64,000 nt of DNA from Macrostomum lignano (taxonomy: Eukaryota). Both the position numbers and the translations under genes were made by a program. The first letter of the stretch is position 1; every line of letters starts with the position of its first letter. This document shows positions 30,501 through 62,899 of this stretch, piece after piece. Where the stretch lies: assembly GCA_002269645.1 (NCBI GenBank), contig NIVC01002393.1:114606-178605 (forward strand), written 5' to 3'. The notes beneath the pieces are model-generated. The model searched no databases. It was given only the letters and a program-made list of their open reading frames with translations, and was not told the DNA's origin.

Positions 30501-33500
30501 TCTGTCTTTCTTTTGGTTTTTCTGTCTGTCTGTCTGTCTTAGTGTTTGTCTGTCTTTCCGTTCGTCTGTCTGTCTGTCTTTCTTTCGGTTTTTCTGTCTG
30601 TCTGTCTGTCTTAGTGTTTGTCTGTCTTAGTGTCTGTCTGTCTTAGTGTTTGTCTGTCTTTCCGTTCGTCTGTCTGGCTGTCTGTCTGTCTTTCATTCCG
30701 TTTGTCTGTCTGTCTGTCTTAGTCCCACTAAAAACGGGTTATCGGATTGACATCGGAATCTGGCCGGATTTTAGCAGGGCAATCGGAATCTGGTGGAACT
30801 AGATTTGCAAGCAAAAAAACGATGAAAAATGTGCTCCAATGACATCCAAAAACTACACAAAGTATTTCCTGGCTTTCTTTGCTTCTCGGAAGCACCCCGG
30901 AAACATACCGGAATATGAGGCTCCATATTCCGACCGGAATTTACACTGCACCCGAGCCGTCACTTTCCGACAATAATTTTGAACGCAAGCTTCGCAAAAA
31001 TATCAGCATACTTATCAACTAGTATGATGACTGTCCACTTTGAAGAAAAAACTCTTTTAGACGGGAATTCTGCGCCCTCGCAATTTGCAAGAAGAACAGC
31101 TAGCAAGCTTTGTTTTACGCGATCAAGTGTTGAAGCTATTGACCAGTTTAATTTGCACACTTCCATTTTCACTAATTTGCGCTCGCTTGGAACATCAGCT
31201 CTTTTGAACACAGCTCCTTTAGCCAACACAGGACAGTGAGACCACAACTTTGAACTCTCTGCAACTTCATCTGTGGTTACACGCAAATACTATACTAGTA
31301 TGCTACTCCTTTCGTTCATTTAGTGCATTTCTTTAGTCTCCTATTATCTTGTATGCTTGAATTTTTTACTGGCGGACTATATAATCGCTAATTTCAGTAA
31401 TAAAATATATTATTATTGTTTATTTGTGATAACAGCTAGCCAAAACTATTATACTATACCTAAAAAGAACAATTTGGTATACTGCAATACTGCATAGTGA
31501 GTTTTGACCATAGTGGCACTTGCAGAAGCTTATTAATATTTGAGTACAGTATATGATAGGCACCAATTGTCCAGCTATACATAATATATACTGACATTGT
31601 ACTATACTCAGCCAGTTTCAATTCAGACCATCGCAAAGTAGTAAACAAGGGCCAATTCTATAAATTCTATCTAGTGCTAGTCCTAGATTTCTCATATTGA
31701 AAGAGACTGCAAATTAAAATAATTGACTACATTGTGTACTAAAAACATATAAGGCAAAAGCTAGTTCTAATAATAAATAAGTATTGTCATTTATTGATTA
31801 ATTTGATTTAATGGCTTTGCCAAGTCGTGCATCAAATAGACAGGTAGCCAGGGAAATGCAAGAAATACTACAAGAGCTTCCGACGATTGGGGCTACAAAT
31901 ATTGAGGCTAGGCTAGATCTAGAAAATGTGATGGGACAAAATGAAGATACAAAGAGCAATGCTGAGCCTGAAGAGACATTCTTTGATGCAGTGGGTCCAA
32001 TGCCAATGGACTTTGATAGCCAAATGCATGCTCTTTTTGAGGAAGAAATGGATGAAGAAGTTGAAGAACAAGATGACTCTCTTGGCTATAATAGACCTCC
32101 GCCACTTACTTTGGTGCAAGAGTTACTATTGTTTTACATAACATTCAATATTACTAGTGCTGCCATGAATTACCTACTTCGGCTTTTGGCTCGTTTCTTC
32201 ACTGACATACCCACTTCTGTCTACATGCTTAAGAGGCAGTGTCCAAGCACAGAGATCACGAGGTTCAATGTCAATAATGGTCATGTTGCCTTTCTCTCCA
32301 TTGTGGACAATTTGAAATTTTTACTTGATTCCAAAATCCTTACAATTCCATCTGGAATTACAAACTTCTTTGTTTCCTTAAGGGTAAATGTTGATGGTCT
32401 TCCTTTATTCAAGTCATCTAGAATCAATCTTTGGCCTATATTGATGCTAGTAAATAATTGTTTTAGACCTGTGCCATTTGGCCTTTTTTGTGGCATTGGA
32501 AAGCCTGACCTACATGTCTTCTTAGAAAGGTTTTGTTCTGAAATTGCAGGTCTACAGAATGGTTTTGACTATAATATGAAAAGAATTTTTATTAAGTCAA
32601 TTGTCTTTATCTGTGACACACCTGCTAGAAACTTTATTCAATGTTTGAAAGGTCATTCCAGTTATCTTGGCTGTAGTTGGTGTCGTCAAGTAGGAAATTA
32701 CACAGGTGACAGAATTTGTTTTTCTAATACCATTGCAGAGGCTCGAACAAATCAAGATTATGAACAAGGGCGTGAAAATAACCAACTTGGTATTTCTCCA
32801 CTAGCCAGGATTGTTCCAATGTATTCCAATTTTGTACCCGACCCAATGCATATTGTCTACTTAGGGGTTGTAAAGAAGTTGCTCAAATTTTACTTCCTTG
32901 GAGCAAAGCACATTCGACTTGCTTGCAAGTTGTCATCCCAATTAAAAGAGGAAATAAATAGAAAAATAATGTATATTAAGGAATTTGTTCCTTCAGATTT
33001 TCAAAGACGGCTTCGCACTTTTGCTGACATTGAATACTTTAAAGCAACGGAATTCCGCCAATGTCTTTTGTACTTTGGTCCGTTCCTTTTTAAGAATACC
33101 TTGCCAAAGGTCTACTTTAATCATTATCTATTATTGCATTGGTCAATTTCAGTCCTTAATTCACCTGAGTACTGTGAAATTTATTTTGATGCTGCTGAGG
33201 CTTGTTTGAAAAAGTTTGTTGCTGAGGCACCAAGCCTATATTACAACAGTGTAGTTTCTTATAATTGGCATGCTCTGTTGCACCTTCCTGAGTTTGTGCA
33301 AATGTATGGCCCACTTGACACGTTTTCAGCTTTCCCTTTTGAAAACTACTTGCAATTGATCAAGAAGAGAATTCGTTGTACCAATCATGTTTTTGCCCAA
33401 TCTGTCAACCAGTTGTTGAATGTGAGATTTTTATATTCTAATGACAAGTTGGGTGACATTGGTTTTACTAATAAGAGTCCTAATAACTGTGCTATTGTTG

Positions 33501-36500
33501 ATGGAAAGGTTGTCATTGTCACCAATTTAAATGATGGTCTTATTTCAGGCCAGGTTCTCACATTTGATAGAAGCCTTTATTCCTATCCATATCCATCAAA
33601 ATCAATTGGCATAGGCTACTATAAGCATTCAAAGACATTTGTATCCAACTTGCAACCTTCTAAGAAGGCCATTCTAATTCCCTTTGGCGGAGACTATCTG
33701 GTCATTCCTTGCATCAAGTAAATCAAGTTATTTGCCTGAAGTCCATCGTCCATAATTGTGTCTTGCCTAAGTTGTTTACAAATGTAATTGTGTATACAGT
33801 CAGCAAATATAATTTAATTAGGTCTAGAATAAAAAAATATATAATTCCATATATATTATATAATATTGAAGTAGTATAGCCATTATAGCCATTAACAAAC
33901 TAAAGCATTTGTTCGGATCATGGTATGAAATAAGATGATCATTATTATTTTTATTATTATTATTAATTAATTTTATTACAAAAAACAATTATTATTGTTT
34001 TGTATAATTTCTATGCTTTATTATAACCTTCCTAAGTGCTTGCAAATATGAGTACGTATTATTTAAGTAATGTGTCCTTCAATGTGAATGTCCTAGTCAG
34101 ACTATTTATGATTTTTGTGGCAGAATTCTAGTGTAAATGTATTTTGACAAGTTGTCTACTAGTAAGTTAGCAAGTAGCAATAGGCCCCTATGAACAATTC
34201 AATAAACATTTTTTGTGTATCCTCTAAATTTGTAACTCACTTGTTCCAATGGAATAATTACATGTTATGTGCCATATTATGCTGTAAAAACTTTAGTTAC
34301 TGCTTGGCCAACATTACACCACAATGAGTAAATAGTCCTTCTTAGTACATGCAGTGTCTTGTGCAGTTGCTAAATCATTAAATAATAAAACTTTAGTTCA
34401 GTAATCTTGTTGCAGTGACTCAATGAAGTTTATTGTGTATTTTACCTCTGACTATGAAGTAATAGAAGCTGATGAGGAAGATTGCCTTCTTGGCTCTTTT
34501 ACTAAGTGGACTATTGAGCAATGGAGGCAAGTGGACAAACTTGAAGAAGTTCATATTCAGGTAATATATAATGACAAGTTGGAAGATTGCATTGTTTTGC
34601 AAGTTGTTCCACATGCCTGTGACACCAGTGACACTGTTGCCATGCTACGAGCTGTGGTCAAAGAGAAGCACTATCGTCCAAGCAAGCTACTAAAGATTCT
34701 GCCAGATCGTGTTCGATCCAACAAAAGACAGACATTTCCTCCTATGAAGAATCTTGAGACAGACAATGATGCAACAGATATTGATGCTGTAAGTATAATG
34801 TAAAATAATATTTAATTTAATATTTAGTATACAACTAAGGTCTGCCACGTGCGTTAATATAAAATATAAAATAATATAATTGTAGGTTGCTGATGCAGCC
34901 AGCCATGGACAAGCCAACCGGGGTCCCACACAGAGAAGTGAATCATTGTCTGGGTCTTCTGGTGTTGTTTGCCTCCCTCCACTGCCAACTCTGCAAGCTT
35001 CGGGAATTGCAGAAGTACGTGCTTACATTTGTGTCTATTTAAAAATGTCAAGCATTTATAGTCTTTATGTATTCATGCATTTGGAGTACAGTATGCTTAT
35101 TAATTTCAAATTATTGCACTTGGCAGTTTGCCAGACATATTACAAAATGATTGAGACAGTTTTAATAGTTTGGATTTTATTCTTTTCTTTAATTTCTCTA
35201 ATCTAACACTGTCTTCACCTCACCCCAATGCCAGGCTAGCGTGACGGCTTGTTGTCACACATCACATTGTTATGTTTATATCTATACACCTCTGTTATGT
35301 CTGCATCATCTCATTCAATGCGTGTATGGTTACTGTTGAGTATATCATTTCTCCTACTATGTTACAGATTAACGTGCTGAGAAAAAAATTATCTATTCTA
35401 ATCATTTCTTTACCAACCCAGGCCTACGACGGCACAATGGCGCAGAGCACTGTCAGGAAACTTCAGAACCGCACCTCCATGGCACCTCCACCAGAACCGC
35501 AGTCGATCGACAGCCCAGCCTTTGAGCGACTGCACCCTCAAGCAGCTCTCAATTCGTCTGGAAGCTCGACGCCTACTCGACACCCGTCTAGGCAGTTTTC
35601 GTGCACTCCAACTTCAGCCCCAAGAGCCAGCTTCTCGCGCGAACAGCTGCGACAGCCTGCGCAGGTAATTTGTAAAACTCGTTTCATGAAGTCTTGCAAC
35701 AGTTTTTTTCAGAACTTGCCACGGTTTCTAACGAAAATTTAATCCACAGTTTTCAGCTCTGCCTCAGCTGGAAACGCAAGCCAGAAGCCAGGTTGAGGCT
35801 TGTGGGTACACGTGGGGATCTGTTGAAGGTAATGGAGTTATTGTTATTGACGCTGAGATAGCAGTAGTTGACAACAGCCGCAAAATGTAACTGGTGACCA
35901 GCGCACACTCGTTGCTTGAACAGCTAGGTGGATGAAATCGACAGCGTCTAGCTTGGAACTGGCACGTAAATTGAAGTTAATTTACTATGCAACTTTCAAC
36001 TCATTATTCAGGGCTCTACTGTCTGCAGCTCTTGAGCATTCGCGAACTCATGAAGCTAAAGGCCACGATTGAGTCGTCCAGTCTCCGGGGAGCTGCTGCG
36101 GCACCCACGCTCGAAATTCCATTCGGGCTTCCTGTCGCAAACGAGGCCGACCTCAACAGTGCAGTCGAGAAGATTTCTGCCAGTGCGGAGGCCAAGACTG
36201 CGCTGGTTAGTTAATATCTTATGAGCATTTCTCTTACTATTAAACTTCCACCATGCGTTCGGAACTTCGGTACTGTAGACTCGGGGAAATGGTCCAGACG
36301 CTTTCATGTGTGAATTTTAGACTTCGTTCATTCAGAAAAAGTGCCTGGGCCCTTCTGTGACTCAGTCTGTTCGCTATGCGATGAACGAGCTTCTGGCGCG
36401 AGACTTCCAGCAGCGCTTCAATCGCACTGGCGGCAAGGATGCCCGAGGCCGTGGCCAACAAGAGAACTCCAAGATGTCTTTCGACAAGTGCTTTGGAGGG

Positions 36501-47473: not shown

Positions 47474-48260
47474 ATGGCTGAGGGGCGATTTTCATTGATG
47501 ACTGAGGGGCGATTCTTATTGATGGCTGAGGGGCGATTCTTATGGATGGCTGAAGGGCGATTTTTATTGATGGCTGAGGGGCGATTCTTATTGATGGCTG
47601 AGGGGCGATTCTTATTGATGACTGAGGGCCGATTCTTATGGATGGCTGAGGGGCGATTCTTATTGATGGCTGAGGGCCGATTCTTATTGATGGCTGAGGG
47701 GCGATTCTTATTGATGGCTGAGGGGCGATTCTTATTGATGGCTGAGGGGCGATTTTTATTGATGGCTGAGGGGCGATTTTTATTGGCTGAGGGGCGATTC
47801 TTATTGATGGCTGAGGGGCGATTCTTATTGATGGCTGAGGGGCGATTCTTATTGATGGCTGAGGCGCGATTCTTATTGATGGCTGAGGGGCGATTCTTAT
47901 TGGCTGAGGGGCGATTCTTATTGATGGCTGAGGGGCGATTCTTATTGGCTGAGGGGCGATTCTTATTGATGGCTGAGGGGCGATTCTTATTGATGGCTGA
48001 GGGGCGATTCTTATTGATGGCTGAGGGGCGATTCTTTTGGATGCCTGAGGGGCGATTCTTATTGATGGCTGAGGGGCGATTCTTATGGATGCCTGAGGGG
48101 CGATTCTCATGGATGGCTCAGGGGCGATTCTTATTGATGGCTGAGGGGCGATTCTTATTGATGCCTGAGGGGCGATTCTCATGGATGGCTGAGGGGCGAT
48201 TCTTATTGATGGCTGGTGGGGGCGATTCTTATTGATGCATTGATGCCTGGTGGGGGCGAT
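47474..48260. repeat. 24-bp minisatellite between ZMYND10 and TRMT10B
   Basis: gatggctgaggggcgattcttatt, about 32 copies. Confidence 0.97.
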
Positions 48261-48615
48261 TCTGAGGATTGGTTAAATCACACGTTTTATTTCTATTTAG
48301 GAACGAAGTTACATGGCTAAGAAGTAAGCATTCACAAAATTACAGAACAGCGAAAAGCTTGCTTGTTTTTTCAACAAATATTTAACTAGAACTTTTAATA
48401 ATGTTCGTATAAACTTCAGTGACATAATTAATAGAACACGTATTGAAAAGTACTTTTTTGCTTTAAAAAACTTCACAGCTAAAATGGAATGATAGGAAAG
48501 TAAAGAAAACAAAAAACAGGACGGATTATTATAGGCAAACGCGTGTAAACTATTGAACAATAAGTAGGGCGAATGAAAATTAAGCAATTAAAAAGTCAGT
48601 AGTTAAAAACCGGCG

Positions 48616-50538
48616 TTAATCAGATTTAACTTCCTCAACGATGGCTCCAGCGTTGGGTTTATTCTGAGGAACCACCACCATCAAGTCGCACGCCGGCTTA
48701 TGCTTAGTCCAGTGTCCCACTTGGCACTCTCTTCGGCAGTACCATTCGTTCTGACAACGCGAGCAGCGTTTAACAGCTGGGGCGCCGCAGGCGGCGCATT
48801 TTGGCGGCTCAGCCAGCATGGCTTCAAGTACATCCAGATTATAAGTGTCCGACCAGAGGGCGGCTTGGGATTTGAAATCTGCCGCACTGATGTTGAACAC
48901 TGTGCCCATCTGGATGCGGGCGATGTCGGACCATTTGCCTGGGGGTTGGGGAATTGAAAGCGATTTTTCCCATTTTTGGTTGGGAATTGAAGGCGATTTT
49001 CCCATTTTTTGTGGGGAATTGAAGGCGATTTTTCCCATTTTTGGTGGGGAATTGAAGGCGATTTTCCCATTTTTGGTGGGGAATGGAAGGCGATTTTTCC
49101 CATTTTTAGTGGGGAATTGAAGGCGATTTTTCCCATTTTTTTGTGGGGAATTGAGGGCGATTTTTTCTATTTTTATTGGGAATTGAAGGCGATTTTTTTC
49201 ATTTTTGGTGGGGAATTAAAGGCGATTTTTCCAATTTTTGGCGGGAATCGAGGGCGTTTTTTCTATTTTTTGTGGGGAGTTAAAGGCGATTTTCACCATT
49301 TATGTTAGGGAATTGAAGGCGATTTTTCCCATTTCTAATTTATTACCGGAGTTACATTATTTATTCCGGCAGAAATGCCGACACTTTTTACTTGCAATCA
49401 AATGTGCTCTGGAAATGAGTAGATGAAACCAGATGCACTAACCTTGATACTTGTCAAGAATAGCAGCCCTGACTTCAGGCAGCTGTTCCAGCAACAATTC
49501 TTTCTTATAAGGCGCGGGCTCCAACAGAGCCATATGCTCCAAGCCTTGCCTTAGCGGCACTAGAAAGGACAACTGATCCAGCACAGTCTCGTGCAGATGC
49601 GAACGAAGCTTCAATAAGAAATTCTTTCGATAGTTAGTCATCTCATATTTACGCTGACACTCTGAGTTAGTAAGCATCTCGTACAGGGCTAACCAAACGC
49701 AGCCTTCTAATTTGACAATTCCACTGTTGAATTCCGCCTGGTCAACAGTCTGCCAACCATTGTCAACGTACTGATAGCACTGCCCAGTAGACGGATGCCG
49801 CAGTTTCCAAGGACGCAATTCGATCAGACTGGCAAACAGCAGTGGATAGTCGTGCACATTCAGTGCCCGAGTCAGAGCTGACAAAGACAAAGACTTGGAG
49901 TTAGTCAGCAAGTTGCTGGACACTGTGACACATTTCAATGCCAATTCAAATTCTAGACTGCGTCTCTGCTGCTCAAGCTCAGAGAGACTCGACCTGGCGG
50001 AGTCTCCGGTCTCATTTTCACCTGACAGACCGCTGTTAGTTTTACTTCTAACTGACAGCAGCCCATCTTCCAGCATGCTGCCTGACTGTGTCAGTTTAAC
50101 CAGCTTCCTGTGACAATAATCAATTAAGTCTAAAGCAACTTCGCCAAGACTCTCAACAACATCCGAATGAAAGCTCAGCGTCTCCAACAAATTTAGCACT
50201 GTAGCTTCATGATAGAGCACCAGATAGATAGGAAAGGTCACCTGCGGCTTGAAGTCGCTATTAGAAATCATCAATGGAAATATTTTCTCTTTCCAAACTT
50301 CAGTTACAAGCAGGTCGTGCATCAGTGTCTCCAATTTGCCGTGATTGACCACGAATTCGGGCACGAACTCATCTTGCTGCTTAGCAACTGACAGGACAGC
50401 CTGCATATTAAGCTTTTCAATGTACTGATGCTGCCTCTGCCATTGGGGATCGCCTATACGAGTCAGCTCTAGCGACTGGAGGCTCTGGACAAAGCCTTCA
50501 GCCTCTGAGGCAAGCAGCACTGCTTCCAGAAATTGCAT
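48616..50538 (-). CDS. ZMYND10: Zinc finger MYND domain-containing protein 10, 2 exons (50538-49443, 48938-48616), 472 aa
   Basis: EAEGFVQSL...WQRQHQYIEKLNMQA, EVWKEKIFP, LYHEATVLNLLET, DYCHRKL, and C-terminal MYND finger CAACGAPAVKRCSRCQNEWYCRRECQVGHWTKHKPAC; phase-1 GT-AG intron. Confidence 0.95.
48950..49335. repeat. 31-33-bp minisatellite in the ZMYND10 intron
   Basis: ggggaattgaaggcgatttttcccatttttggt, about 12 copies. Confidence 0.93.
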
Positions 50539-52219
50539 GGCATGATGTTGACTGCGGCATTGGCTCTAACCATCCAACCCCAGCAACGAGCCCACATCAC
50601 TGACAAAGACAGCATGGGGAGCCTGCATGGCCAGGCTCTGCATACACTGCCCCCAGATCAAGGGACTCTGTTGTTTCAAACAAAGACATCGTCTCTGTCC
50701 AAAAAAAGATGAGGCTCAAACTAGCTCCAGAATATTCATCAATAAATTAAAAATAGCAAATACAACTTCTACTACTGAATTTTCTTGATACTTTACTAAT
50801 AGTAGTAAACAATAGAAAAAAATGATAATAAATTAAACATATGTTTAATAATTGAATAAAAACAAGAAAATGGAAGCCAAACATTTTTTGTTGTTGAAGC
50901 AATTAAAAATTAATTAGCAGCTAATGAAAGATTCACAAAATTAAACTAAGTAAAATAATCATAGTGACTATTTAAAATACAAAAATTATATATGTATATG
51001 TATAAAAACATAGGTATTAAGAAACTGCAATAATTTCATTTATAGGGATAAAAAGGTCTCAGTCAGCTAAATCTATAAGCACTATCTGGTTCTTTGATTT
51101 CAAAATTATAGTTCCATTTGGCCTACTGGGTGCAAACTCAAGTTGCTAAATTAAGAACCAAGATGCTAGCTAATAGTAACCAAAAGTTCAAAATCAAATA
51201 AAATGCTAAATATACAAATTTCCTGTCAATAGGTTATTCAAAGTTTCAAACTAATAATAATAAGTCTTGAAATTACTTTTGTTCCATGTTAATAATGCAA
51301 GCTTACTTCTAAGTGCAAACACATTAATTTAGAGCTGAATTAAAATTTTGGTTTATGTTTACTTGCAAAGTTGCAGACTTGCAGACTTGGATTTAAGCTG
51401 TCAATGCATTTTTTATGATTTTGAACATAGGAACTATATATAGAATTAAAAAAAATACATAGAATCCAAATTAAAAAAAACTTTTTATAAATATGGTTTT
51501 TTTTTATATCAAAAGCTGAACACTAAGCCTGTCTCCTATTGAAAGTAATTTTTGTATAAAAAAAGTGAAAAACTCATCTCTGTAGTGTATTTTTTGGTAA
51601 AAAAATTTGCCTCCTTAACTAAAAAAAGGTTTCGTATCCTTGGCAGATATATGCTGAAACCTCCCTGTGGTGTATTCAAGGAGCCACACCTAACTATCAA
51701 GACTATCAAGCCTATCAAGCTATCAATATATGAAAGAAACACAATAGAAGTTACTACATGGAATTTTGCTATAATAGCATAATTGCCTAAGCCCTATAAA
51801 TCAAGCAACAATGACTATTATTCTTGACTTGCACTTTAAACTGTTACCACACCTAGATCCTATTTGTTAGACTAAGTATCAATGGACTTTTAGATATTTA
51901 GGCATCCTTCATTTCTCTAATGTTACCACTATAGTTGGCATATAAGTTATAGTTTATATAATAAACTAGAGTGTCATAGGAATCTTGAATGATATTTTAT
52001 TGTTAGTATTAAGAATAGTTTATATTTTCATCTTATACTTTGATAGACTGAGATAGACTATAATAGGCTAAAGTTAAATAGTTTAATTTTCAATGAACTA
52101 TGTTAAAAAGCCTATTTGAATTAATTCCTTTTCTTATATTTGAATTGTTGGCTAATATAGCTAATATTAGATTGTTGCATAGGATCAATAACATTAAATT
52201 AGTTTATCTTTATTTGATA

Positions 52220-53475
52220 TTGGGTTGTAAAAAAGTTCAAGTGTTTTCTTTAAACTTCTAGAACTTTCTCTAAAGAAATTTCTAGAATGTTCTATGGGGC
52301 TATATAAGAGTAACCAGTGTGCACTACCATATTGACTTGGTTATGATCAACCTTCACCTACAATGGCTATGCAATAACATGATCAACATTACTTCATTTG
52401 AGCATATTTACTTTTCTACTTCAAGCTAGGCAACTCAGCAGCTAAGGCATATTGCAAGTTATCTTAGGCATATGGCGAGGACTATCTGAGTGAGCAATAC
52501 TGCTATGCCTGGTTTGCGGAGTTCAACAAGGGTAAGGAATAACTTGAAGACAAGGAACACTCTAGTCACCCACCTAAGCTTGATATATAGCAGCTTGCCT
52601 TACTTGTTAAAGCTAAGCCAAATCTTACAATACATGAAATGGCAGAGTACTTCAAGGTCTCTACCATGACCATTGACTGCTACTTTCATCAACTCGGCAA
52701 AGTGCACAAGCTTGGTCAATGGGTTCCTCATAAACTTTCACATGAGAACAAGGATCAACATATTATCATATACATGCACCCAACTCTTATCCTATTGCCA
52801 CAACCCAGGATAGCTTGATAGCCTAGTGATTGGTAATGAGAAGTGGATGGCCAATTTCAACTATACACACAAGTGCCAATGGCTTGGCATGGGAGATTAG
52901 CCACAACCAATACCCAAACCTGATCCAAACCAAAAGAAAGTCATGTACTCATGTTGTGTATCTGGTAGAATTCCAGTCAAATTGTCCATTGGGAGCTCTT
53001 GCCTATAATACCAGCATCACTGCCAAAGTCTATTATAAACAGCTAGATAGACTATACTAGGCCTAGGCTATTGTCAAAGCAGCAGGGTGCTGGTGCAAAA
53101 ATTTGATTTTTTCACGACAATTCCCAACCTTATGTGGTGAAGAAGACACTGTAGAAGCTGCTTGAGCTGAGCTGGGAAGTCATGCCTCACTCTCCATACT
53201 TGCTTGACAGCCTCTAGATAGGCTAAGGAGATGACAGCTTTGCTTGAGCAATACTTTAAGTCACTATTGCCTTAGTTCTTTAAGAAAGGCATCTAGAATC
53301 TTATTGCCAGATTGGGAATGCTATTTTGGGTAATATAATAGTTTTTGATCCTATGATGGCAAAAGATCATTTATTAGGATAGTAATTATATCCTAGACTA
53401 AAAACTATTATGGGACTAGAAAACTGAATTTAAAGTTTGACTATATAAATGCTCAAACCTTTTATTACAACCCAA
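52220..53475 (+). mobile_element. Mariner (Tc1/mariner) DNA transposon fossil, 1256 bp, transposase pseudogene
   Basis: TIRs TTGGGTTGTAA.../...TTACAACCCAA with TA on both flanks; remnants WFAEF, GQWVPHKL, IGNEKW, KKVM, FHDNSQP, HSPYLLD with in-frame stops. Confidence 0.92.
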
Positions 53476-54840
53476 TAGAAGCATACAAGGTCAAATATTA
53501 AATAAAAATCTGCTTTAGGTTTAAAAAACTAATAGTCAAAAGATTTTGCCTTACAAGTTACTGCTAAGATATTAAACTTTGTAAGGAATTGCCAAGGTGC
53601 CAAAGCTTGAATTAATGAGAAAATATAAGTAACTATTAAAAAGAAAAAAAAGTAAATAGATTAAAAGTTAAATAAAATTTAATCTATTAATTATCATTAT
53701 AGATATATCACAATGTTAAACCAGTGTGTTAAGGTATATTCAAATGACTAGGGCCTACATTTCCTAATACAAATTATAATAAGCTCTTAGTCTTAGACAA
53801 TTATTAATTAAGCTACTTATTATACTAAATCAAATCTACTAGAATCCAGTAGGCCTATTCTAAATATCAAAGCTAACTAAAGCTAGGCTAGCTAAAAGGC
53901 CTAGCCTAGTCCAGGCAATAATTTGATCATTTATTATTGACACTTTCTTTCTATTGATACCATTAACACTATTGCTTACTAAACTTGTTATACAATTTTT
54001 TATTTCCGAAAATTCTTATAGGCCTAGGCCTTTTAGCTAAAATAAAACAAATAGACCTATAGGCTATAGCAATCTTATGATGCATATTATATGATAATTA
54101 GGCCATTGGGGTTGCATTGCATACTAATGTCGATGCTATTATCCCTGCTTACTAGTTACTACTCTAATAACCAAAACAAATATTTTATTGCTTTTTGTAT
54201 TGATTAAATGCTAAGATTCATTCATTTATGACTTATGATTGAAGTAAATTGTTTTACTGACATCACTTTATAGCTTGCACATTATAGTAGTATCATTATC
54301 ATTACTGGGCCTTTTATTTTAATTATTCTGGTTTTAGAACCAGATCCAATTTGTAAATTCAAATTATTGAATGGCAATAGCCAAGGAGTGAAAAATTGTG
54401 CAAAGTGAGGCTGTTCGGGCATGCAAACATTCAATAAAGTTAAAAAACAATCCTACAATGCTTTTTTCTTGGAAGATCCAAAGCCAGTCTGTTTTTGAAA
54501 TTGGGTAGGCAGTAATGTGAAAAGCCTCAGGATCAATTTTGTCCTAATTACGTATGGTCGTATACGTCAGAGTTTATAAAACAAACAAGCAGAAAGCTTT
54601 TTTTCTAGAAAATTCGTGAGATACAAAAATCATGCCTTATAGAAGAAAAATATGTCTTGTTTTGTTTTTACTAATTAACAGTAATATATTTCACTAATTA
54701 TTTATAAGTGTACAAGCGTTTTATGTACTTTGTTTTACTTTCACCATTTCTTATAAGTACGTTTTACAAGAAACCAGAAATTAAAAAAGTTCCTAACATG
54801 CAGTGCCTAAATTGCCGAAGTAATTGAACGAGGGCCTAGG

Positions 54841-57800
54841 CAGGGGCGTAGCCAGGAATTTTTTGGGGGTGATGATTAATGAATTAATGATTAATGAATC
54901 TACTCTACTAGGCTAATTTGATTAGTTAGGCCTATATAGTACTCAGTAATCAGTAATATTAAATGAATTTGCCATCCAGCCATCCTTTGCCCCAGTGAGC
55001 AGTGTCTTTCGACCAGCACCCATTACCTTGTGTCAACCATCTTGATATTAAAAAATGCTTGAAAAAAAAACTATGAAAACTGGGTTTTCAATGTATCTAA
55101 TCTTTGCTTTTTGCTCTTCCCAATCTCTCCTCAGCTAGCCCAACTCTGCAACTCTCATATTGCAAGTTGCATCACTCAAAAGGCAATACTGAGCTAGAAT
55201 TTACTCCTCACTCTCAAAGGTGGTGACTTTAATGTTGCTAAATATATATTACTCATGCTAATTCTAGGCTTATTATATTAAGACTTGACAACTAAAATTT
55301 TAATTTAGTTACTTACAGATAATCATGTCCCATGGAGACACCAGGGTTAGTACAATGCTTCCGTTGACACCTGACCTGGCATTGGTTTGAGGCTTTTATA
55401 GTGGCTCACCGAATGCTTTCTTAGCAGAATTGAATATCTTATTGAAATAGACTTGGCTATTATCAGAGAAGAGATCTTGAAGAACATCAATGATAGCAAT
55501 GACAGCCTTAATTTTATTGACACAATCAACAAGATTGAGATCTACATATTAAAATTTTTTTGATAATGGCTTTGTGATATTAAGAATAGCATTGATAATG
55601 TGGCCTGAAATAATTAAAATATTTGTTGTCTAGTAGGGCCTAGTAAAAGTTTAAGGTTGTTTTGAGCATTGTTGCCTGCCTTTCCTACCCATGTGCTGAT
55701 CTCCTATAGAGCTTCAATGTTTGTTGGTAAGAGTAGGTTGAATTGGATGAAAGCCTCTTACTTTTCAACCCATCTGGTCTTGCAGTTCTATAAAAGTTGA
55801 TGCATAGATAACTCTGGAACCAACTCTTAGATTTCTTTCAAGCAGAGCTATTTTTGTGGCAATCAGCAAATGAAAACTGTGACTATAGTCTATATTAATA
55901 GCAGTAATGGTAGCTTAAACTAAATCTAGCTTATAAGCATCCTGGAGAGATATGTTTAGATCATGTGCAGCACAGTGCATATAGATTGCTAGTTTTTTCC
56001 CAGTACTTGCAAATCACTGCCTGAATATCATTGAACTTGCCAGGCATGGTTAAAGGTCTAATGATCATAGCCTTGAGTAACAAATTATGCTATAATATGG
56101 AGAGAATCAAGTGTCTCAAGAAGCTTTGTTGCAAGCCCAATACCAGTCAGATCTTCAATATGAACAAAGCATATGAACTGTTTGTGAATAACTACACTTT
56201 GACCATTGATGTTGAGATACCTAACATAGATGGATATTTGTTCTTTGTATAAAGAATCTATAGTCCCATCTGTAAGCAGCACAAAGTAGCCTGCTTTGTT
56301 GATTTTTTTGCTAAATTTTGGGTAATAACATTAGACAGAGCCTGAATTATTTCATTCTGTGATTCACTGGAAGTGTATTTGGCATTTGATGGTCCAGTAC
56401 AAAGGTGTTTACATAGAACAGGATCATGTTTTGCAAGAAGCTCTAGAAATGCAACAAAGTTCCCTTTGTCATAGTCAATAGTTCCATCTAAATGAACTTT
56501 TATAAGTCCATAGTCACAATGTCCTTGAAAAAACAGACTACAATAAGCAAGAAATTCAATTGGTTGGTTCAATTACATGTTTTAGTCTTTCCCTATTTTC
56601 TTTCACTAGCTTTGTGCAACTGATATCCAGCATGTGACCAACATTCATTCCAGATAACAGGGCATCAACTTTGATCACAGTCACTTCTGTGATAGTCACA
56701 TTGCAAATGCTTCTTTAGCTTTGTTGTGATCACATTGAACTTAGTGCATGGAGTTCTCACAAATTCATCAACTTTTTGTCCATGGATGGCAAAGTTGGTC
56801 AAAAGAAAAAGAATGCAATACCTAAAGGAGAAAGAAATGGTTGAAATGGAAAGAGTAAGTATTAAGTCCATATGTCAAGACCAGATCTAGATAGCAAGAG
56901 TAGGATTTAGCAATATATGTCAATAACCTCATTAACTTCAAAATCACTTGCAAAATGCACTGCTGAGCTTAGCAGAATACTCAAAGCATGTGTTATAACC
57001 AGTTAGATATTGGTAAGACAAGTAGTGCTTGTGGACATTGCCCTTATTAGATTTAAGCAAGAATGGGAATGAGTACCTTAGACGGGGGCACCCAATAGTC
57101 CTTAAGCAATTATAATCAAGTAGTTGTATCCAGCTTTCCATTGCGACAAAGCTCAACAACATAGCCAATGTCATTGACATTGATCTTAGCAGCTGTTTCA
57201 TCTGCTTGATATTAGAGTTCAGACTTGTCAAACTGACTTGAAGAAGTAATTGTAGACAATTGTTGCTTGGGAGCTGTTGGAACTAAATTTGGAGTAGCCA
57301 AGTCTGGCAAACTGTCAGTAGCAATGTCACAAGACACAATAGATGACTGGCTATGTAGTGCTGGAACTAGGTTTAGACAGTTGCGCAAGATCAGGGTTTG
57401 GGCAGGACTGCTTTAAGTTCTCAAATAATGAGCAGATATCATGACCATGAGATTTTTGTTTGCTCATTTTGAATTTCACATGAACTCTTTGCAGATTTTA
57501 GTAGCAATCTAGAAATAAAAAATCTGCCTTAGAATTAATTATAAATGACTTGGAAGAGGTTATAGTTAATTATTTCCTTATTCATTTCCCTTCCTAGGGT
57601 GGTGAGGACAGCAGACAGATATTCTTAGTCTTCCTTAATGTATAACTCGTAGATTGCTCATTTAGCTCATTCCTTCCTACTAGTTCTCTGTATGTAATGT
57701 ACTAACCCCCTGAATTTTATTTTCTAGTTAATTCTTCTTCAATGACAGACTTCTTTCAAACAAATCAGAAGCTAATGAATTTTGCAGCAAAAACTGGCTA

Positions 57801-58178
57801 GGCACCCACCTCCATTGTCCATCACTAATTCCACTAGCTGACTACCCATGCCCTAGTACCACATTTCAGTTATCCACTTACCCCCTTCACCCCTAAATAG
57901 TTGGTCAGTTGGGTGAGTGAGTTGATAGTTATCCAAAGACCAAGTTATATGAATACAAAAAAATCAAAGACTTGAGATCCACTTTATATATTTCTAGTGC
58001 ATATTAGTGATATTATTACATATCATCACTATATTTGTTTGTTAATTGTTATTCTATCAATTCAGATAGCTTTCTCTTTTTAAATGATAACTTGCAACTG
58101 AAAAAAACGAAATAAAAAATTGCTTTGGAAATTTGGGGTATTGGCCAATACACTGATACCCTCCTCATTATGCTTCTA
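54841..58178 (-). mobile_element. hAT DNA transposon fossil, 3338 bp, ZMYM1-like/DUF4371 transposase pseudogene
   Basis: Identical 8-bp TSD ggcctagg (54833-54840, 58179-58186); left TIR caggggcgtagccagg; right end cctcattatgcttcta reads as a mutated cct.gctacgcccctg; minus-strand remnants QGH.D, KGNFVAFLELLA, AKYTSSESQNEII, LTDGT.D...KEQISIYVRY, MHCAAH.LN. Confidence 0.88.
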
Positions 58179-59251
58179 GGCCTAGGCCCTATAATAACTA
58201 CAAATGTACATCTCCTTGGGTCACTCTCTGAGGTAAAAAGGTTGTATCAAGGGGTCACTGTCTAAAGTACATGGGCTGCATCAAGGGCATACATGCGCAA
58301 CAGTCGGCCAAGTTGGCCGATCTGGCTGACTGATTTGGCGACCAACCAAGAAAGTCACAAAAATGCCCACCCAAAAAACACCCAAGTAGTAGTACTAAGT
58401 AGCTGACGAGGCATTTTGGCTTAATAAGAGAGTCATAGTTACTTCTGCCATTTACCCAAAGTTGCATTAATTTTGCTTTACAGTTTTTTTACATGCAAGT
58501 CGCATTTTTGTTAAAACTAAGTCACACAGCCAACCAAATTTTGGAGGTAGCGCATGTATGATCAAGGGGTCACTTTAAAAGTTGCAACACAAGTGATCAT
58601 TGTTTACTGTTTACCATTTTTTTTTCAAAAAACACAAGTCACAACTTTGTTACTATGTCATGCTGTACCATGCTGCGCTGCACCATGCCAAGCCACATTG
58701 CACCATACTGAGCTGCGCTGCACTGTGCCAAGCCGTGTTGCACCAAATTGCATTAAGTATTGCCTTACTGAAAATGCGCCGTGCCGCAGGGTCATTTTGT
58801 AAAAATGTGCCAGAGGGCCATCCACCATTTTGCAACTTATTCCAATAGGGTTCATTAATTTACTAATTCTTTGCACTAGTTTATGCCATTTTGACAAATT
58901 TTATTAATCTTATGCCTAATTATACCAATTTAATTCCAGGAAACAAGCTATTGAAACCCATAGATTTTGGGCATTTTTTTATCTTACAACCTACATTTTG
59001 CATCAAATTTGTTATATGACACCCAATGGAAAATAGTAAGGAATGTAAAGAAACAGAAGTCTTAAAATTAAAAAAACCAGAGGTTATATCATGGTAGTGA
59101 AGACTAAGGTTTATAGAATTTACTTTTGTTTTACAATGCCTATAATTAGAGATAGACATTGAGGGTATTGTATTACAAAAGTGAGGACAGAAATGTTAAG
59201 TCCAAAAAGTTGAGCCAAACTTTCAGTTTCCTATCTAGGCATAATCCTAAT

Positions 59252-59921
59252 TAGGGGTCCTAAATCCCCTTGGATCCGGGATTTTTTTTGTTACAATCCT
59301 AGGATTAAACGAAAAATTTATGGGAAGTTTTCCATTGTCTATAGAACAAGTACCAGCAGCAGTAAATAGAAATTTGCAACTGCACTGTTTCTGTGACATA
59401 AAAAACTAGCAACTCTGGCAAGTGATAGTGAGAGGTGACAGCTCAATTGTAAAAATTGTGAGCATACACAAATTGGGGTTGTTGCAACAGCACAAATAGC
59501 CATGAATGAATTGCAAATTGTCAGTATTGTTGCTTATATTACATGGCATTGGCACTATGGCAGTCAGCACTGCATCCTGCGGTGGGGCCTGGGCCAGTAG
59601 GCCAGTGTCTAGGCCATCGCCACTTAGACAGTTAGACTAGTCTAGACTAGACCCTTAGTCTAGTGACTAGCTAGTACATAGTGCTTGATACAGTTAATTG
59701 ATACTCTTACTGTCCTTCATTCTATAACTTCAATAACTTCATTCTTAGGATGCAATAATTCTCTCAAAACTGTTAATTGCTAACTCCAAAACAAAAAAAT
59801 ATTTACTTCTGTAGTGTGAATTCCAATCCCATGTTTACTGGATCCTGGACCCCTAATCCTGGGATCCTGAACACTAACAAAGCGCCAGGATCCTGGGATC
59901 TTGGGATCCCAGGGACCCCTA
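59252..59921. mobile_element. hAT-type MITE, 670 bp
   Basis: TIRs TAGGGGTCC and GGACCCCTA; 8-bp flanks atcctaat/gtcccaat (6/8); internal ggatcc repeats at both ends. Confidence 0.72.
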
Positions 59922-62899
59922 GTCCCAATCAATATTAAAGAAATGGTCATTAGAATGAATAGTTACAGGTCGCTAAAAGAAAGGCAGCAAAGATCTTAGC
60001 CTCAGACTAGATCTAATACATTGTCATAAGAGACCTGCAAAAATAAATAGTAAATGAACTAGGGCCTATTCATTAGCATATGAAATCCCAAGTTGAAACC
60101 CCTTTCACTTTCATTTTAAAATATATTATTAACAAATTGTCTATTTAGGGTATTGTAAATATAAAGTGAATATAAGGATTGTGCTCTAGTAAGCTACAAG
60201 TAGGCTTTTGCAATTGGCTACATCTGTTTCAATTCTTACTATTCTCTATTGGGTATTGTGTAACAAAATTGACACAAATAATCAATTGGGTTAAGGGTAT
60301 TATAAGACAAAAGAATGCCAGATTTTAACCTGCTATATTTTAATCCCTTGAACTATTTTTCACATACATTTTTAAATCTGAAGTCAAACTTGTTAATAGT
60401 TATAATGAAATCAAATTAAAATTCAAGGCAAGCTAGGGGTCAGACAAGATCTCAATCATAATCATCAAGATCTTGCCACTTTTTTCAATCTCAAACTTAG
60501 TTTCAAAATCTCAAAAGTTAAGATTTGTAAAGGCCTACATAAATATTTGTGACTATAATAATACAAGCATATCTAGTTATGGTGATCTTCCAGTTTGTTT
60601 CCTAATATTATTTTCAAGTTTGAATTGGTGCTGCAATATAGTGCCATGGTAGAAAATGATGTCTATAACCAAAAGGCATAGAAAATAGTATCAGAAAATG
60701 CTCCAGTCTCTAGCTCTCTAGCCCTATCTATTGCTCTATCTACCACTTTAGCTATTGCTCCATTTACTTATCTATAAACTGCTGTATCTAGTGTTCAGAG
60801 GCAATATGTTGTTGCACGCAATTCAAACTTGAAATAATATTGCAAAAAAATAAAAGCTTGTTTATGTTATTCAATATCATACTTATATTTGAATATATCA
60901 AGTTAATTAACAGGTTCAATATTAAATAATCATTGCTTTTCTTTCTATTATCATGATTGTGTATATTTTTAACAAGTAACAATATCAACATGGATGGATA
61001 GAATAGTGTAAATAGGCCTACTAGATGCAAATTAGGCTTAATCTCGAAAATGTGATATCATCCAACCTCTAAGGCAAGCATTGATCTTGTTCGTTAGGGT
61101 CGCATAGAATCACAGGCAACATCTCTAAAGCATGCATTGGCAAAATCTGGCCTCTTCTCTCCTCCTTATCTCTCATCTATCATCTCTTTCCTTCTTCTTC
61201 TCTCTTCCTCTTCTCTCCTCTCTTCTGTCTACTCTCTTCTCTCTCGTCTGCTCTCTCATCCTTCCTCTCTTCTCTCTACTCTCATCTCTGCTCTGTCATC
61301 TCTCATTTCTCATACATCGCAAAAATGCCCATCTGAAAAATACAAACGTACACTAATTAGATGATGGGGCATTTAGCTCTAATAATAGTCATAGTTACTC
61401 CTGCCGTTTACCTAAAAATTACGTTAATTTTTGCTTAGGTTTTTTCCACAGGTAAGTCGCATTTTTATCAAAAAAGTCGCACGCATTTGTAAACTAGGGG
61501 GTTTGCGCATGTATGTTCCCTCTCGCCTCTTATCTCTCTCCCTCTCTTCTTTCCTCTTTCCCTCTCCTGTCTCCCCTCCTCTCTCCTCTCCTCTCGCTTC
61601 TTTCTCCCCTCTTATCTTTCTCCCCGCTCCACTCGCTTTTCTCTCCCTCTTCTGCTCTCTCCTCTCGCTTCGCTCTTCCTCTCTCCTCTCTCCTCTCCTC
61701 TCTTTCCTTCTTTCTCCTCTCTCTCCTTACGCCCCCCTCTTCTCTCTTCTCTTCTCTCCCCCTTCCCCTCTTCTCTCTCTTCCTCGCACCTCCACCCTCT
61801 TCTCTCTATCTTCTCTCTCCTCACTCCCCTGTGAAGTTGAGAGTAAGATAAAGGACCTAAGAGTGCAATTATTGATCTAAAAGTGGGAACAACAAACTAA
61901 GAATGCAATTAAGGATCCAAGAGTGAGGTTAGTAACTGTAATGAAGATTCAAGATCTTCAAGGATATTTGGATAAGGGATTTGGGAGTTTTGGGAGCTTA
62001 AAATATGCGATTAAGGATCTAAAAGAATATTGAGGATCTGGTAAGAAAGAGATCCCTATTAGTAGTAAAGAAAAGCTGATTGAGGTATTGAGTGAGATTG
62101 AGAGTCATTGAGATGCTTATTACTTGTCTAGCCAATAAGAATGGTTGCTTGCTACTTGCTGCAAATACTAATTGACTGCTGCGTGAGTGAGCGACATTTG
62201 AGGTCGTCTGCTGCTGTGGCCAAAGCTTAGAAGCTCGGGCGCCATTGCTTCAACTATGTGGGAACCACAAGAGGGGTGGGTGGGTTGGTAGGAGTGGCAG
62301 TTGAGGGCTGTGTATTTATCTGCATGTGTCTAGACTAGTCCTGTATATTCATACTAAAGTATATACTTAGTGTCTAGTTCTCTTTTATCTTCTGTTCCCG
62401 CAGCCATTAGAGTCTAGTCGAGTCTAGTCTAATAACAACAAACCAGATGTAGTAGTAAAGTGAATTTAGTCTTTTTACTTCTTTCAGTTTCTTTTAGTAT
62501 AAAGAGCAATTTGTTGTTTTCTTACCCATACGCGAATTCTAAAACTCTGGCCGGGCTTGAAGAGTTTCAAGCGTCCTTTTTTTCTATTTTTATCAGCGCA
62601 TCTAAACCTTGGTCCTCTTCCCCTCGGATCCCTAGATAATATATAGAACTTGCATGAGTAGAAATAGGGAGTTTAAGTACGCTGGCACTCTAAAGAGGGT
62701 ACAATAAATTTTGTGTCGTATGCTGTTATTTATACTAGTCTTAGTCTATATATTCATAGAGTCCTATCTATATGAAGAGATAAGAGTGGAAACGGAAGGA
62801 GAATTCCACAAATTTTGATGCGAAATGGGCCATTTTACTTATATTCCATCCCAGTGTAAACTGATCTATCCTATGTCCACTTAATTGTATAGGGGTTCA

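What the first reader, a model, noticed from the sequence alone, without database searches (positions are those of the whole stretch)
50800..61050. RIP-like, one-directional C>T/G>A hypermutation of a transposon island in an animal genome
Seen: this 10-kb block is nearly free of CpG and rich in TpA/CTAG (ctaggcctagg, gactagtctagactag), unlike the CpG-rich exons beside it. Its transposons keep their length, termini and TSD positions. Where I compare them with recalled family motifs, the differences are almost all C>T or G>A, and many are outside CpG, often at CpA/TpG (CAG>TAG, CAA>TAA, CAT>TAT, GAT>AAT, GTG>ATG). Established: dense transitions with few indels and a CpA bias is the signature of fungal repeat-induced point mutation, whereas animal 5mC decay is mainly CpG-limited. 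Inference: a repeat-targeted cytosine methylation/deamination process with broad context may operate here, which I do not know to be described for animals.
Basis: partly seen in the sequence, partly recalled or inferred. Interest (0 to 1): 0.85.

Follow-up and report, generated by a model that had tools for sequence, protein, structure and literature searches.

The report
Dead transposons decaying by cytosine loss
This 10-kb stretch of the flatworm Macrostomum lignano is a nest of old dead transposons that have slowly lost nearly all their CpG sites and many other cytosines to C-to-T changes; this looks like decay of methylated DNA, not a fungal-style hypermutation burst.

Summary
The window is Macrostomum lignano contig NIVC01002393.1. 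The block 50800-61050 lies upstream of ZMYND10 and is a nest of dead DNA transposons: a Mos1-like mariner, a hAT, a MITE and a TIR-bounded element.

CpG o/e is 0.16, against 0.6-1.1 in host exons. I found four young genomic copies of the same hAT family and used their consensus as the ancestor. The island copy differs at 337 of 2620 sites. Of these, 70% are C>T/G>A, 9.5% T>C/A>G and 20% transversions, with 23 indel events. Of the C>T/G>A changes, 58% are outside CpG.

CpG is still the main target: 90 of 95 CpG dinucleotides are destroyed. Per-cytosine loss is CpG 0.53, CpA 0.17, CpT 0.13 and CpC 0.09, with CAG the highest non-CpG context at 0.27.

It is not RIP-like:
- The RIP substrate index rises with decay instead of falling.
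- Changes are strand-symmetric and unclustered.
- Copies about 1% diverged show the same spectrum.
- Copies 98-99.7% identical coexist unmutated.

A rough non-transposon control (intronic minisatellites) shows only 35% C>T/G>A and no CpG effect.

Best reading: gradual deamination of targeted 5mC. M. lignano keeps DNMT1 and DNMT3. A non-CpG methylation component is possible but unproven.

The parts
50800..52219 (.). AT-rich unclassified DNA at the left of the block, almost free of CpG
   Evidence: GC 0.265. 1 CpG against 24.9 expected, o/e 0.04. No paralogue found in the window or the fetched loci.
52220..53475 (+). Dead Mos1-like mariner copy with TIRs, flanked by TA duplications at 52218-52219 and 53476-53477
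   Evidence: The pseudo-protein matches mariner transposase P0121 at E=1.2e-37. It aligns to Mos1 taken from a PDB alignment. TIRs. At least 5 frame segments and 13 in-frame stops. CpG o/e 0.09. At 93 columns invariant in three reference mariners there are 20 one-step changes: 11-13 C>T/G>A, 6-7 transversions and 0-1 T>C/A>G.
54380..54841 (.). Flank abutting the hAT 3' end that keeps its CpGs; its last 8 bp are one copy of the hAT target-site duplication
   Evidence: 9 CpG against 12.4 expected, o/e 0.72, versus 0.08 inside the hAT. TSD read.
54842..58178 (-). Old dead hAT copy (TTF zinc finger / DUF4371 / hAT dimerisation family). TIR is CAGGGGCGTAGC in young copies. 8-bp TSD CCTAGGCC at 54834-54841 and 58179-58186. 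Homology to the family is lost between 54870 and 55319.
   Evidence: 78-84% identical to intact M. lignano copies L003-L006, which encode P0123. Spectrum, context and codon-position analyses. CpG o/e 0.08.
58287..58560 (-). MITE copy with TIR GCATACATGCGC, partly CpG-decayed
   Evidence: 84% identical to a copy inserted inside the young hAT of L006 (9902-10189). CpG count is 22 in the young copy, 7 here and about 0 in an older L003 copy.
58997..60278 (.). 1.28-kb element bounded by 52-nt inverted repeats, unclassified, CpG-poor
   Evidence: Inverted repeat I1, 77% complementary. CpG o/e 0.14.
61317..61482 (-). Second, partial copy of the same MITE just outside the block
   Evidence: 75% identical to 58355-58527. 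77% identical to the L006 copy.
48616..50538 (-). Host gene ZMYND10 (exons). It identifies the organism and serves as the CpG-normal neighbour.
   Evidence: 99% identical to M. lignano BOX15_Mlig027174g1. The window is identical to NIVC01002393.1. Exon CpG o/e 0.6.

Best explanation
The block is an old nest of dead DNA transposons in the intergenic DNA upstream of ZMYND10 in Macrostomum lignano.

The copies have decayed gradually. This was not a burst. The mutation process adds a large excess of cytosine-to-thymine transitions to an otherwise ordinary background of transversions, A:T>G:C transitions and indels.

The excess is about ten-fold stronger at CpG, which has been driven almost to extinction. 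It falls off as CpG >> CAG > other CpA and CpT > CpC. It is symmetric between strands.

The most likely cause is spontaneous deamination of 5-methylcytosine in the germ line. The methylation would be laid down by the DNMT1/DNMT3 system that this flatworm retains, and directed at transposon or repeat DNA rather than at gene bodies.

Shown here: the spectrum, its direction, its context dependence, its clock-like accumulation, and its absence from exons, minisatellites and one adjacent flank.

Inferred: that methylation is the cause; that non-CpG methylation explains the non-CpG excess; and that targeting is by element rather than by region.
For: ORGANISM AND ELEMENTS.

ANCESTOR PROXY: four young hAT copies at other loci, 98-99.7% identical.

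ISLAND COPY AGAINST THEIR CONSENSUS
- 2620 sites and 337 substitutions: 237 GC>AT transitions, 32 AT>GC transitions, 68 transversions.
- C>T 115 against G>A 122. Runs test z=+2.0.
- Per-cytosine loss: CpG 0.53, CpA 0.17, CpT 0.13, CpC 0.09.

CpG FATE: 95 CpG dinucleotides became 41 CA, 34 TG, 11 TA, 4 other products, and 5 remain intact.

NON-CpG CONTEXT: CAG 29/107 against other CAH 40/292 (p=0.003). CHG against CHH odds ratio 2.0 (p=4e-4). Across the whole block, CAG/CTG is depleted and TAG/CTA and CAA/TTG are enriched.

POLARITY: GC>AT loss is equal at codon positions 1, 2, 3 and in non-coding DNA (0.23, 0.19, 0.20, 0.18). The changes therefore lie on the dead copy's lineage.

GRADUAL ACCUMULATION
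- Singletons in the young copies are 38 GC>AT transitions, 8 AT>GC transitions and 12 transversions, with 20 of the 38 at CpG.
- This spectrum is indistinguishable from that of the old copy (p=0.58).
- The MITE family shows graded CpG loss, 22 then 7 then about 0.

TARGETING
- Minisatellite control: 35% GC>AT transitions, 19% AT>GC transitions, 45% transversions, and CpG not hypermutable (6/20 against 71/251).
- Transposon against control: p=4e-15 for all sites and 1.6e-6 for non-CpG sites. The ratio of AT>GC transitions to transversions is the same in both (p=0.78).
- Exons have CpG o/e 0.6-1.09 and GC3 0.44-0.71.
- The 462-nt flank has o/e 0.72 next to the hAT at 0.08.
- Other loci are a mosaic of CpG-poor patches and CpG-normal DNA.

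LITERATURE: M. lignano keeps DNMT1 and DNMT3 and has low-level 5mC; its genomic pattern is undescribed (PMC11292947; PMC9246332; PMC10658182).
Against: - No methylation data were available, so 5mC on these sequences is inferred from mutations only.
- The non-transposon baseline is a rough proxy. It uses low-frequency variants among minisatellite units. It has an oddly high share of C<>G transversions (16%), so it may carry alignment noise or array-specific processes.
- With a different baseline, the non-CpG excess (about 2.5-3 fold) could be ordinary AT-biased mutation or a lack of GC-biased gene conversion.
- The full spectrum rests on one family (hAT). The MITE and mariner give supporting but weaker data.
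- The other hAT flank, 58179-58286, has 0 CpG. The sharp boundary is therefore seen on one side only.
- The CAG preference rests on 29 events.
Confidence: 0.6

Rival explanations
1. RIP-like hypermutation. A duplication-sensing, premeiotic system deaminates or methylates cytosines of repeated DNA in bursts, with a CpA bias.
For: - GC>AT transitions are 70% of changes and 58% of them are outside CpG, with CpA the commonest non-CpG context.
- The 5' TIR of the hAT carries 7 C>T/G>A changes in 20 nt.
- TpA/ApT is 0.97, above the usual 0.89 threshold.
Against: - The substrate index is 1.42 and rises with decay, 1.39 to 1.55. The composite RIP index is negative.
- CpG is the main target.
- 30% of substitutions are not C>T/G>A, and there are 23-37 indel events.
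- Copies about 1% diverged and about 13% diverged have the same spectrum.
- Four 4.1-kb copies at 98-99.7% identity coexist without heavy mutation.
- There are no strand-coordinated runs.
Confidence: 0.05
2. Ordinary neutral decay. The spectrum seen in the hAT copies is simply the neutral mutation spectrum of non-genic DNA in M. lignano: strong AT bias plus methylated CpG everywhere outside genes. There is no repeat targeting and no non-CpG methylation. Exons differ because of selection or biased gene conversion, and minisatellites because of their own turnover.
For: - Transversions accumulate in proportion to age, and the old copy carries many indels.
- AT-rich, CpG-poor patches with no recognisable transposon occur at other loci and next to genes.
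- S>W relative to W>S transversions also lean further to AT in the transposon (28:5) than in the control (36:12).
- The control is noisy.
Against: - CpG is not hypermutable in the intronic minisatellites (6/20 against 71/251).
- A 462-nt flank that predates the hAT insertion keeps CpG at o/e 0.72 beside the hAT at 0.08.
- C>T is raised relative to C>A in the transposon, 137:28 against 71:36 in the control. Fixation bias cannot produce this (counts).
- The implied equilibrium GC of 11-15% is far below any part of the window.
Confidence: 0.25
3. Editing by a single-strand DNA cytidine deaminase (AID/APOBEC-like) acting on transposon DNA during transposition, transcription or replication.
For: C>T occurs in all dinucleotide contexts, and more than in the control.
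Against: - C>T and G>A are equal in number and alternate more than chance (runs z=+2.0), so there are no strand-coordinated clusters.
- The 5' neighbour has almost no effect: AC 0.16, CC 0.15, GC 0.13, TC 0.13.
- The 3' G dominates, which is the signature of methylation rather than of known deaminases.
- The spectrum is the same in young and old copies.
Confidence: 0.04

Closest known systems
5-methylcytosine deamination decay of methylated transposons (classical in vertebrates and plants; reported in some invertebrates with transposon methylation)
   Same: - CpG is hypermutable and decays to TpG/CpA.
- The process is strand-symmetric and accumulates gradually.
- Unmethylated compartments keep their CpG.
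- The organism retains DNMT1 and DNMT3.
   Different: - Host exons are not CpG-depleted, whereas most invertebrates methylate gene bodies rather than transposons.
- There is an additional non-CpG C>T excess with a CAG preference.
- The methylation itself was not observed.
Repeat-induced point mutation (RIP) of Neurospora and other ascomycetes
   Same: Repeats end up AT-rich, full of stop codons and dominated by C:G>T:A transitions, many at CpA.
   Different: - CpG rather than CpA is the main target.
- The RIP substrate index moves the wrong way.
- 30% of changes are of other types, and indels are common.
- Accumulation is clock-like, not a burst.
- Near-identical copies persist unmutated.
- There are no strand-coordinated runs.
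Dim2-dependent 5mC mutagenesis of transposons in Zymoseptoria tritici (bioRxiv 10.1101/2020.03.27.012203; only its abstract was seen)
   Same: DNA methylation of repeats raises their mutation rate. This is a methylation-driven route to transposon decay that is separate from classical RIP.
   Different: It is a fungal system with a different methyltransferase family. The details of context preference are my own recollection and were not checked here.
Non-CpG (CpA, especially CAG/CAC) methylation by DNMT3-family enzymes in mammals, and CHG methylation in plants
   Same: The context order found here, CG >> CAG > other CH, matches the known preference order of such enzymes (my own knowledge).
   Different: Here it is only a mutational footprint of 29 CAG events in one element. 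No enzyme or methylome evidence is available.

Membership tests
RIP (repeat-induced point mutation) | Mutations are almost exclusively C:G>T:A transitions | tested here: not met
   237 of 337 substitutions (70%) are C:G>T:A. There are 68 transversions, 32 reverse transitions and 23 gap openings.
RIP (repeat-induced point mutation) | CpA/TpG substrate depleted and TpA product enriched: (CpA+TpG)/(ApC+GpT) at or below about 1.03, TpA/ApT at or above about 0.89, composite index positive | tested here: not met
   Island values are substrate 1.42, product 0.97, composite -0.45. In the hAT the substrate index rises from 1.39 (young) to 1.55 (decayed). Thresholds are from my own knowledge of the standard RIP indices.
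RIP (repeat-induced point mutation) | Duplicated sequences are mutated soon after duplication, so long near-identical copies do not persist | tested here: not met
   Four 4.1-kb hAT copies are 98-99.7% identical, with only 4-27 private changes each.
RIP (repeat-induced point mutation) | Depends on a RID/Dim-2-type cytosine methyltransferase and acts premeiotically | not testable with these tools
No crosses are available.
5mC-deamination decay of methylated DNA | CpG cytosines mutate far faster than other cytosines, giving TpG/CpA | tested here: met
   90 of 95 CpG dinucleotides are lost: 41 CA, 34 TG, 11 TA and 4 other products. The per-cytosine rate is 0.53 against 0.14 at non-CpG sites. Young copies show 20 of 38 GC>AT singletons at CpG.
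5mC-deamination decay of methylated DNA | Strand-symmetric, unclustered, accumulating with age | tested here: met
   C>T 115 against G>A 122. Runs z=+2.0. Young and old copies have the same spectrum. The MITE shows graded CpG loss.
5mC-deamination decay of methylated DNA | The organism has maintenance and de novo cytosine-5 methyltransferases | not tested
   Taken from the literature only: DNMT1 and DNMT3 are conserved in M. lignano and 5mC is low (PMC11292947, PMC9246332, PMC10658182).
5mC-deamination decay of methylated DNA | The affected sequences are methylated in the germ line | not testable with these tools
   No methylome data were accessible. The primary paper (Wasik et al. 2015) is not held.
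AID/APOBEC-type editing | Strand-coordinated clusters and a 5'-neighbour motif (TC or WRC) | tested here: not met
   Runs test z=+2.0, meaning more alternation than chance. The 5' context is flat at 0.13-0.16.
mariner/Tc1 (Mos1-like) transposon | Short TIRs, TA duplication, DD(34)D transposase | tested here: met
   TIRs and TA duplications. The pseudo-protein matches mariner transposases and Mos1. The catalytic motif is partly mutated, for example HDNARPH is now HDNSQPY.
hAT transposon | 8-bp target-site duplication, short TIRs, transposase with a hAT dimerisation domain | tested here: met
   TSD CCTAGGCC on both sides. The young copies encode P0123 with DUF4371 and Dimer_Tnp_hAT.

The most novel reading that the evidence does not exclude
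Macrostomum lignano directs cytosine methylation at transposons and not at gene bodies, in CG and also in CWG/CH contexts. The resulting deamination works as a slow, RIP-like mutational disposal of transposons. That would be a plant- or fungus-like genome-defence pattern in a bilaterian, perhaps guided element by element given the sharp CpG boundary at the hAT end.
Probability: 0.3. Interest if true: 0.7.

Novelty: new member of a known kind. Interest (0 to 1): 0.45.

Why it matters
[quoted passage not shown] M. lignano is the flatworm model that still has DNMT1 and DNMT3.

The mutational footprint found here makes three predictions:
- Methylation sits on transposon bodies.
- It spares exons and intronic tandem repeats.
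- It may extend to CAG sites.

Most invertebrates are thought to show the opposite pattern. The predictions can be tested directly with existing bisulfite or long-read data.

The result also removes the more dramatic claim of a RIP-like system in an animal.

Tried and rejected
- The word-indexed protein search with the mariner pseudo-protein found only two distant mariners and none from M. lignano.
- The same search with the three concatenated hAT frames found nothing.
- An exact look-up of the intact 636-aa ORF at 31811-33721 found no record.
- The second genomic copy of this locus, L002, differs from the window only by indels (0 mismatches in 12.6 kb). It gives no substitution data.
- L004 and L005 share only the hAT, not their flanks, so there is no duplicate-locus neutral control.
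- Within the window, the only paralogue of island sequence is the MITE pair.
- Protein-level inference for the mariner works only at 93 invariant columns. It becomes meaningless at 2-of-3 columns, where true lineage divergence dominates and transversions reach 62%.
- I considered that the excess C>T might be GC-ward evolution of the active hAT lineage. I rejected this because the excess is equal at all codon positions and in non-coding DNA.
- I considered that CpA-context hits were CpG sites mutated differently in the two lineages. I rejected this because only one CA>TG double change exists.
- I considered that CTAG richness was a product of the process. I rejected this for the hAT because the counts are 15 and 16.
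- ORFs in CpG-poor patches of other loci gave nothing classifiable.
- Wasik et al. 2015 could not be read.

Full report
WHAT THE WINDOW IS

A 366-aa exon at 49438-50538 (minus strand) is 99% identical to Macrostomum lignano ZMYND10, BOX15_Mlig027174g1. Fetching that gene's contig showed that window 38616-60526 is 100% identical to NIVC01002393.1 of assembly GCA_002269645.1. A second contig carries the same locus with indel differences only.

The window holds three host genes, all on the minus strand. They are a HECT-domain ubiquitin ligase with long GC-rich exons, a TRM10-type tRNA methyltransferase, and ZMYND10. Their introns are packed with minisatellites. The finding covers the intergenic DNA upstream of ZMYND10.

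CHECKING THE OBSERVATION

Composition of 50800-61050:
- GC is 0.34.
- There are 46 CpG where about 295 are expected (o/e 0.16). Outside two sub-blocks the value is 0.09.
- Host exons have CpG o/e 0.6-1.09 and GC3 0.44-0.71.
- CTAG occurs 68 times against about 32 expected.
- TpA is not enriched (o/e 0.90).
- CpA/TpG is in excess rather than depleted (o/e 1.21).

Elements in the block:
- A Mos1-like mariner at 52220-53475, with TIRs and TA duplications.
- A hAT at 54842-58178 on the minus strand, with both TIRs and a perfect 8-bp duplication CCTAGGCC.
- A MITE at 58287-58560.
- A 1.28-kb element bounded by inverted repeats at 58997-60278.

The elements are not free of indels, however. The mariner frame is in at least five pieces and a conserved 24-residue stretch is missing. 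The hAT has 23-37 gap openings and has lost homology over its last kilobase.

GETTING A REAL ANCESTOR

I looked for genomic relatives instead.
- The word-indexed searches with the pseudo-proteins failed.
- An exhaustive HMMER search with a stop-free 103-residue piece of the hAT (window 56261-56569, minus strand) found P0123. This is an intact 846-aa M. lignano transposase, 76% identical.
- Its 90% cluster has four members.
- Their DNA gave four young copies of the same 4.1-kb element at four other loci, 98-99.7% identical to each other.
- The island copy is 78-84% identical to them.

THE SPECTRUM

Against the consensus of the four young copies, over 2620 aligned sites, the island copy has 337 substitutions:

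| Class | Count |
|---|---|
| G>A | 122 |
| C>T | 115 |
| A>G | 19 |
| T>C | 13 |
| Transversions | 68 |

That is 70% GC>AT transitions, 9.5% AT>GC transitions and 20% transversions. Per site, a C or G was lost at 0.20 and an A or T changed by transition at 0.022.

The direction is secure. GC>AT loss is the same at codon positions 1, 2 and 3 and in non-coding DNA (0.23, 0.19, 0.20, 0.18). This is what neutral decay of the dead copy predicts. It is not what sequence evolution of the active lineage predicts.

The mariner could only be compared with three distant transposases. It agrees qualitatively. At 93 invariant columns there are 20 one-step changes, of which 11-13 are C>T/G>A, 6-7 are transversions and 0-1 is a reverse transition.

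CONTEXT

CpG is the main target. Of 95 CpG dinucleotides in the consensus, 5 survive. 41 are now CA, 34 are TG and 11 are TA.

Per-cytosine loss by context:

| Context | Fraction lost |
|---|---|
| CpG | 0.53 |
| CpA | 0.17 |
| CpT | 0.13 |
| CpC | 0.09 |

Because CpG is nearly exhausted, 137 of the 237 GC>AT transitions (58%) lie outside CpG.

Two bases downstream there is a further effect:
- CAG is lost at 0.27 (29/107) against 0.14 for other CAH (p=0.003).
- CHG against CHH has an odds ratio of 2.0 (p=4e-4).
- The whole block carries the matching composition: CAG/CTG is under-represented, and TAG/CTA and CAA/TTG are over-represented.
- The 5' neighbour hardly matters.
- C>T and G>A alternate slightly more than chance (runs z=+2.0), so there are no strand-coordinated clusters.

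BURST OR CLOCK

The private changes of the four young copies, each only about 0.5-1% from the consensus, are 38 GC>AT transitions, 8 AT>GC transitions and 12 transversions. Twenty of the 38 are at CpG. Among the rest the order is again CpA > CpT > CpC, with 10, 6 and 1 events by my own count of the contexts listed; one further event lies in a poorly aligned cluster and was not assigned.

This spectrum cannot be told apart from that of the old copy (p=0.58). Several young-copy changes are at the same CpG sites that are mutated in the island copy.

The MITE family shows the same gradient. A copy that jumped into a young hAT has 22 CpG, the island copy has 7, and an older copy has about none.

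The excess therefore accumulates steadily, in fixed proportion to transversions.

STANDARD RIP DIAGNOSTICS

- (CpA+TpG)/(ApC+GpT) is 1.42 for the block. It rises from 1.39 in the young hAT to 1.55 in the decayed copy.
- The composite index is negative.
- CTAG is 15 in the young hAT and 16 in the old one, so it is native and not a product of the decay.
- Four long copies at 98-99.7% identity coexist.

RIP as a mechanism is not supported.

IS THE PROCESS SPECIAL TO TRANSPOSONS

I had no duplicated unique DNA to use as a control. I therefore used the 21 minisatellite arrays of the window. Variants carried by at most 25% of the units were polarised against the array's majority base.

Results for 218 variant types:
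- 35% GC>AT transitions, 19% AT>GC transitions and 45% transversions.
- Per-site GC>AT over AT>GC ratio of 2.2, against 8.6 in the hAT (6.2 outside CpG).
- No CpG effect: 6/20 against 71/251.
- The result is the same in clean and in noisy arrays.

Comparison with the transposon:
- All sites: p=4e-15. Non-CpG sites: p=1.6e-6.
- The ratio of AT>GC transitions to transversions is the same in both (p=0.78). This suggests that only C>T is raised.

The control is imperfect. Its C<>G transversions are unusually common (16%), so the size of the non-CpG excess (about 2.5-3 fold) is uncertain.

Independent pointers to targeting:
- Exons are CpG-normal.
- A 462-nt flank at 54380-54841 ends in the hAT's own target duplication and so predates the insertion. 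It keeps CpG at o/e 0.72 beside the hAT at 0.08.
- At the four other loci, CpG-poor patches alternate with CpG-normal DNA.

Against element-level targeting:
- The hAT's other flank has no CpG.
- Some CpG-poor stretches cannot be assigned to any transposon.

MECHANISM

The pattern is the expected footprint of 5-methylcytosine deamination. CpG is hit about ten times harder than other cytosines. The products are TpG and CpA. Both strands are hit equally. Accumulation is steady. Exons and tandem repeats are spared.

According to reviews, M. lignano retains DNMT1 and DNMT3 and has low overall 5mC, with the genomic pattern undescribed. Low overall 5mC would fit methylation confined to a minority of the genome.

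The graded non-CpG excess, with CAG on top, matches the known flank preferences of DNMT3-type enzymes and of plant CHG methylation (my own knowledge). That is an inference from few events.

Alternatives:
- A generally AT-biased neutral spectrum in non-genic DNA (plausible for the non-CpG part).
- A single-strand deaminase (disfavoured by the symmetry and the lack of a 5' motif).
- True RIP (disfavoured as set out above).

VERDICT

The RIP interpretation is not supported.

It is best described as ordinary methylation-driven transposon decay in an animal where the methylation pattern has not been described. That is a new member of a known kind, of moderate interest, and directly testable with a methylome.

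Noticed in passing
window 31811-33721 (+): An uninterrupted 636-aa ORF sits in an AT-rich, CpG-poor (o/e 0.30) stretch inside an intron of the HECT ligase gene. It looks like a transposase-type protein to my eye, but it has no Pfam match and no exact record in the protein collection.
   Followed up: partly
window 54380-54841: A 462-nt patch inside the CpG-poor block keeps 9 CpG (o/e 0.72). It includes a near-palindrome, acgtatggtcgtatacgt. It directly abuts the hAT end and contains one copy of the hAT's target duplication. It could be an unmethylated functional element. No explanation was tested.
   Followed up: partly
L006 9902-10189; window 58287-58560 and 61317-61482; L003 about 6640-6900: A roughly 280-bp MITE family with TIR GCATACATGCGC is recently active. 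One copy has inserted inside a young hAT copy and still has 22 CpG.
   Followed up: partly
window 53060, 53890-53905, 54020-54040, 54831-54841, 58178-58190 and others: Palindromic AGGCCTAGGCCT-like motifs recur through the block. GGCC is 3.2x and CTAG 2.1x over expectation. One motif is the hAT target duplication, another lies inside the mariner, and 53889-53904 / 54024-54039 form a perfect 16-nt inverted repeat. This may be a preferred insertion target or the ends of an unrecognised element.
   Followed up: no
window 1-49400 (21 arrays, e.g. 6654-8218, 9853-10744, 18067-19504, 22307-24706): There is an extreme density of minisatellites, with periods of 12-69 nt and up to about 100 units, in the introns and spacers of the host genes. 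Many have strong strand skew, and some are shared between distant sites (2883-3689 with 13993-15196).
   Followed up: partly
L002 (NIVC01002219.1) against window 47879-60529: A second contig of the assembly carries the same locus with 0 mismatches and 24 gap openings in 12.6 kb. It looks like the same locus or haplotype assembled twice, with long-read indel errors. Small indels in this assembly should therefore be read with care.
   Followed up: partly
window 5388-6630 and 15521-16805: Two diverged paralogous protein-coding segments, 70-75% identical at the DNA level, lie 10 kb apart, each followed by related tandem repeats. This suggests a local tandem gene duplication. The ORFs begin MADGGEPDVEAVAEQLAAVNIQDEPVGELVWDEF...
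   Followed up: no
L005 3087-5965 and 9168-13273: One of the young hAT copies lies about 3 kb from a PAZ/Piwi-domain Argonaute gene. Between them is a 2-kb AT-rich patch with CpG o/e 0.11.
   Followed up: no
L003-L006 hAT copies (alignment): Private mutations are unevenly shared among the young copies. L006 has about 22 GC>AT transitions and 5 others, while L003 has about 8 and 8 (my own count of the listing). This may reflect different local methylation or age.
   Followed up: no
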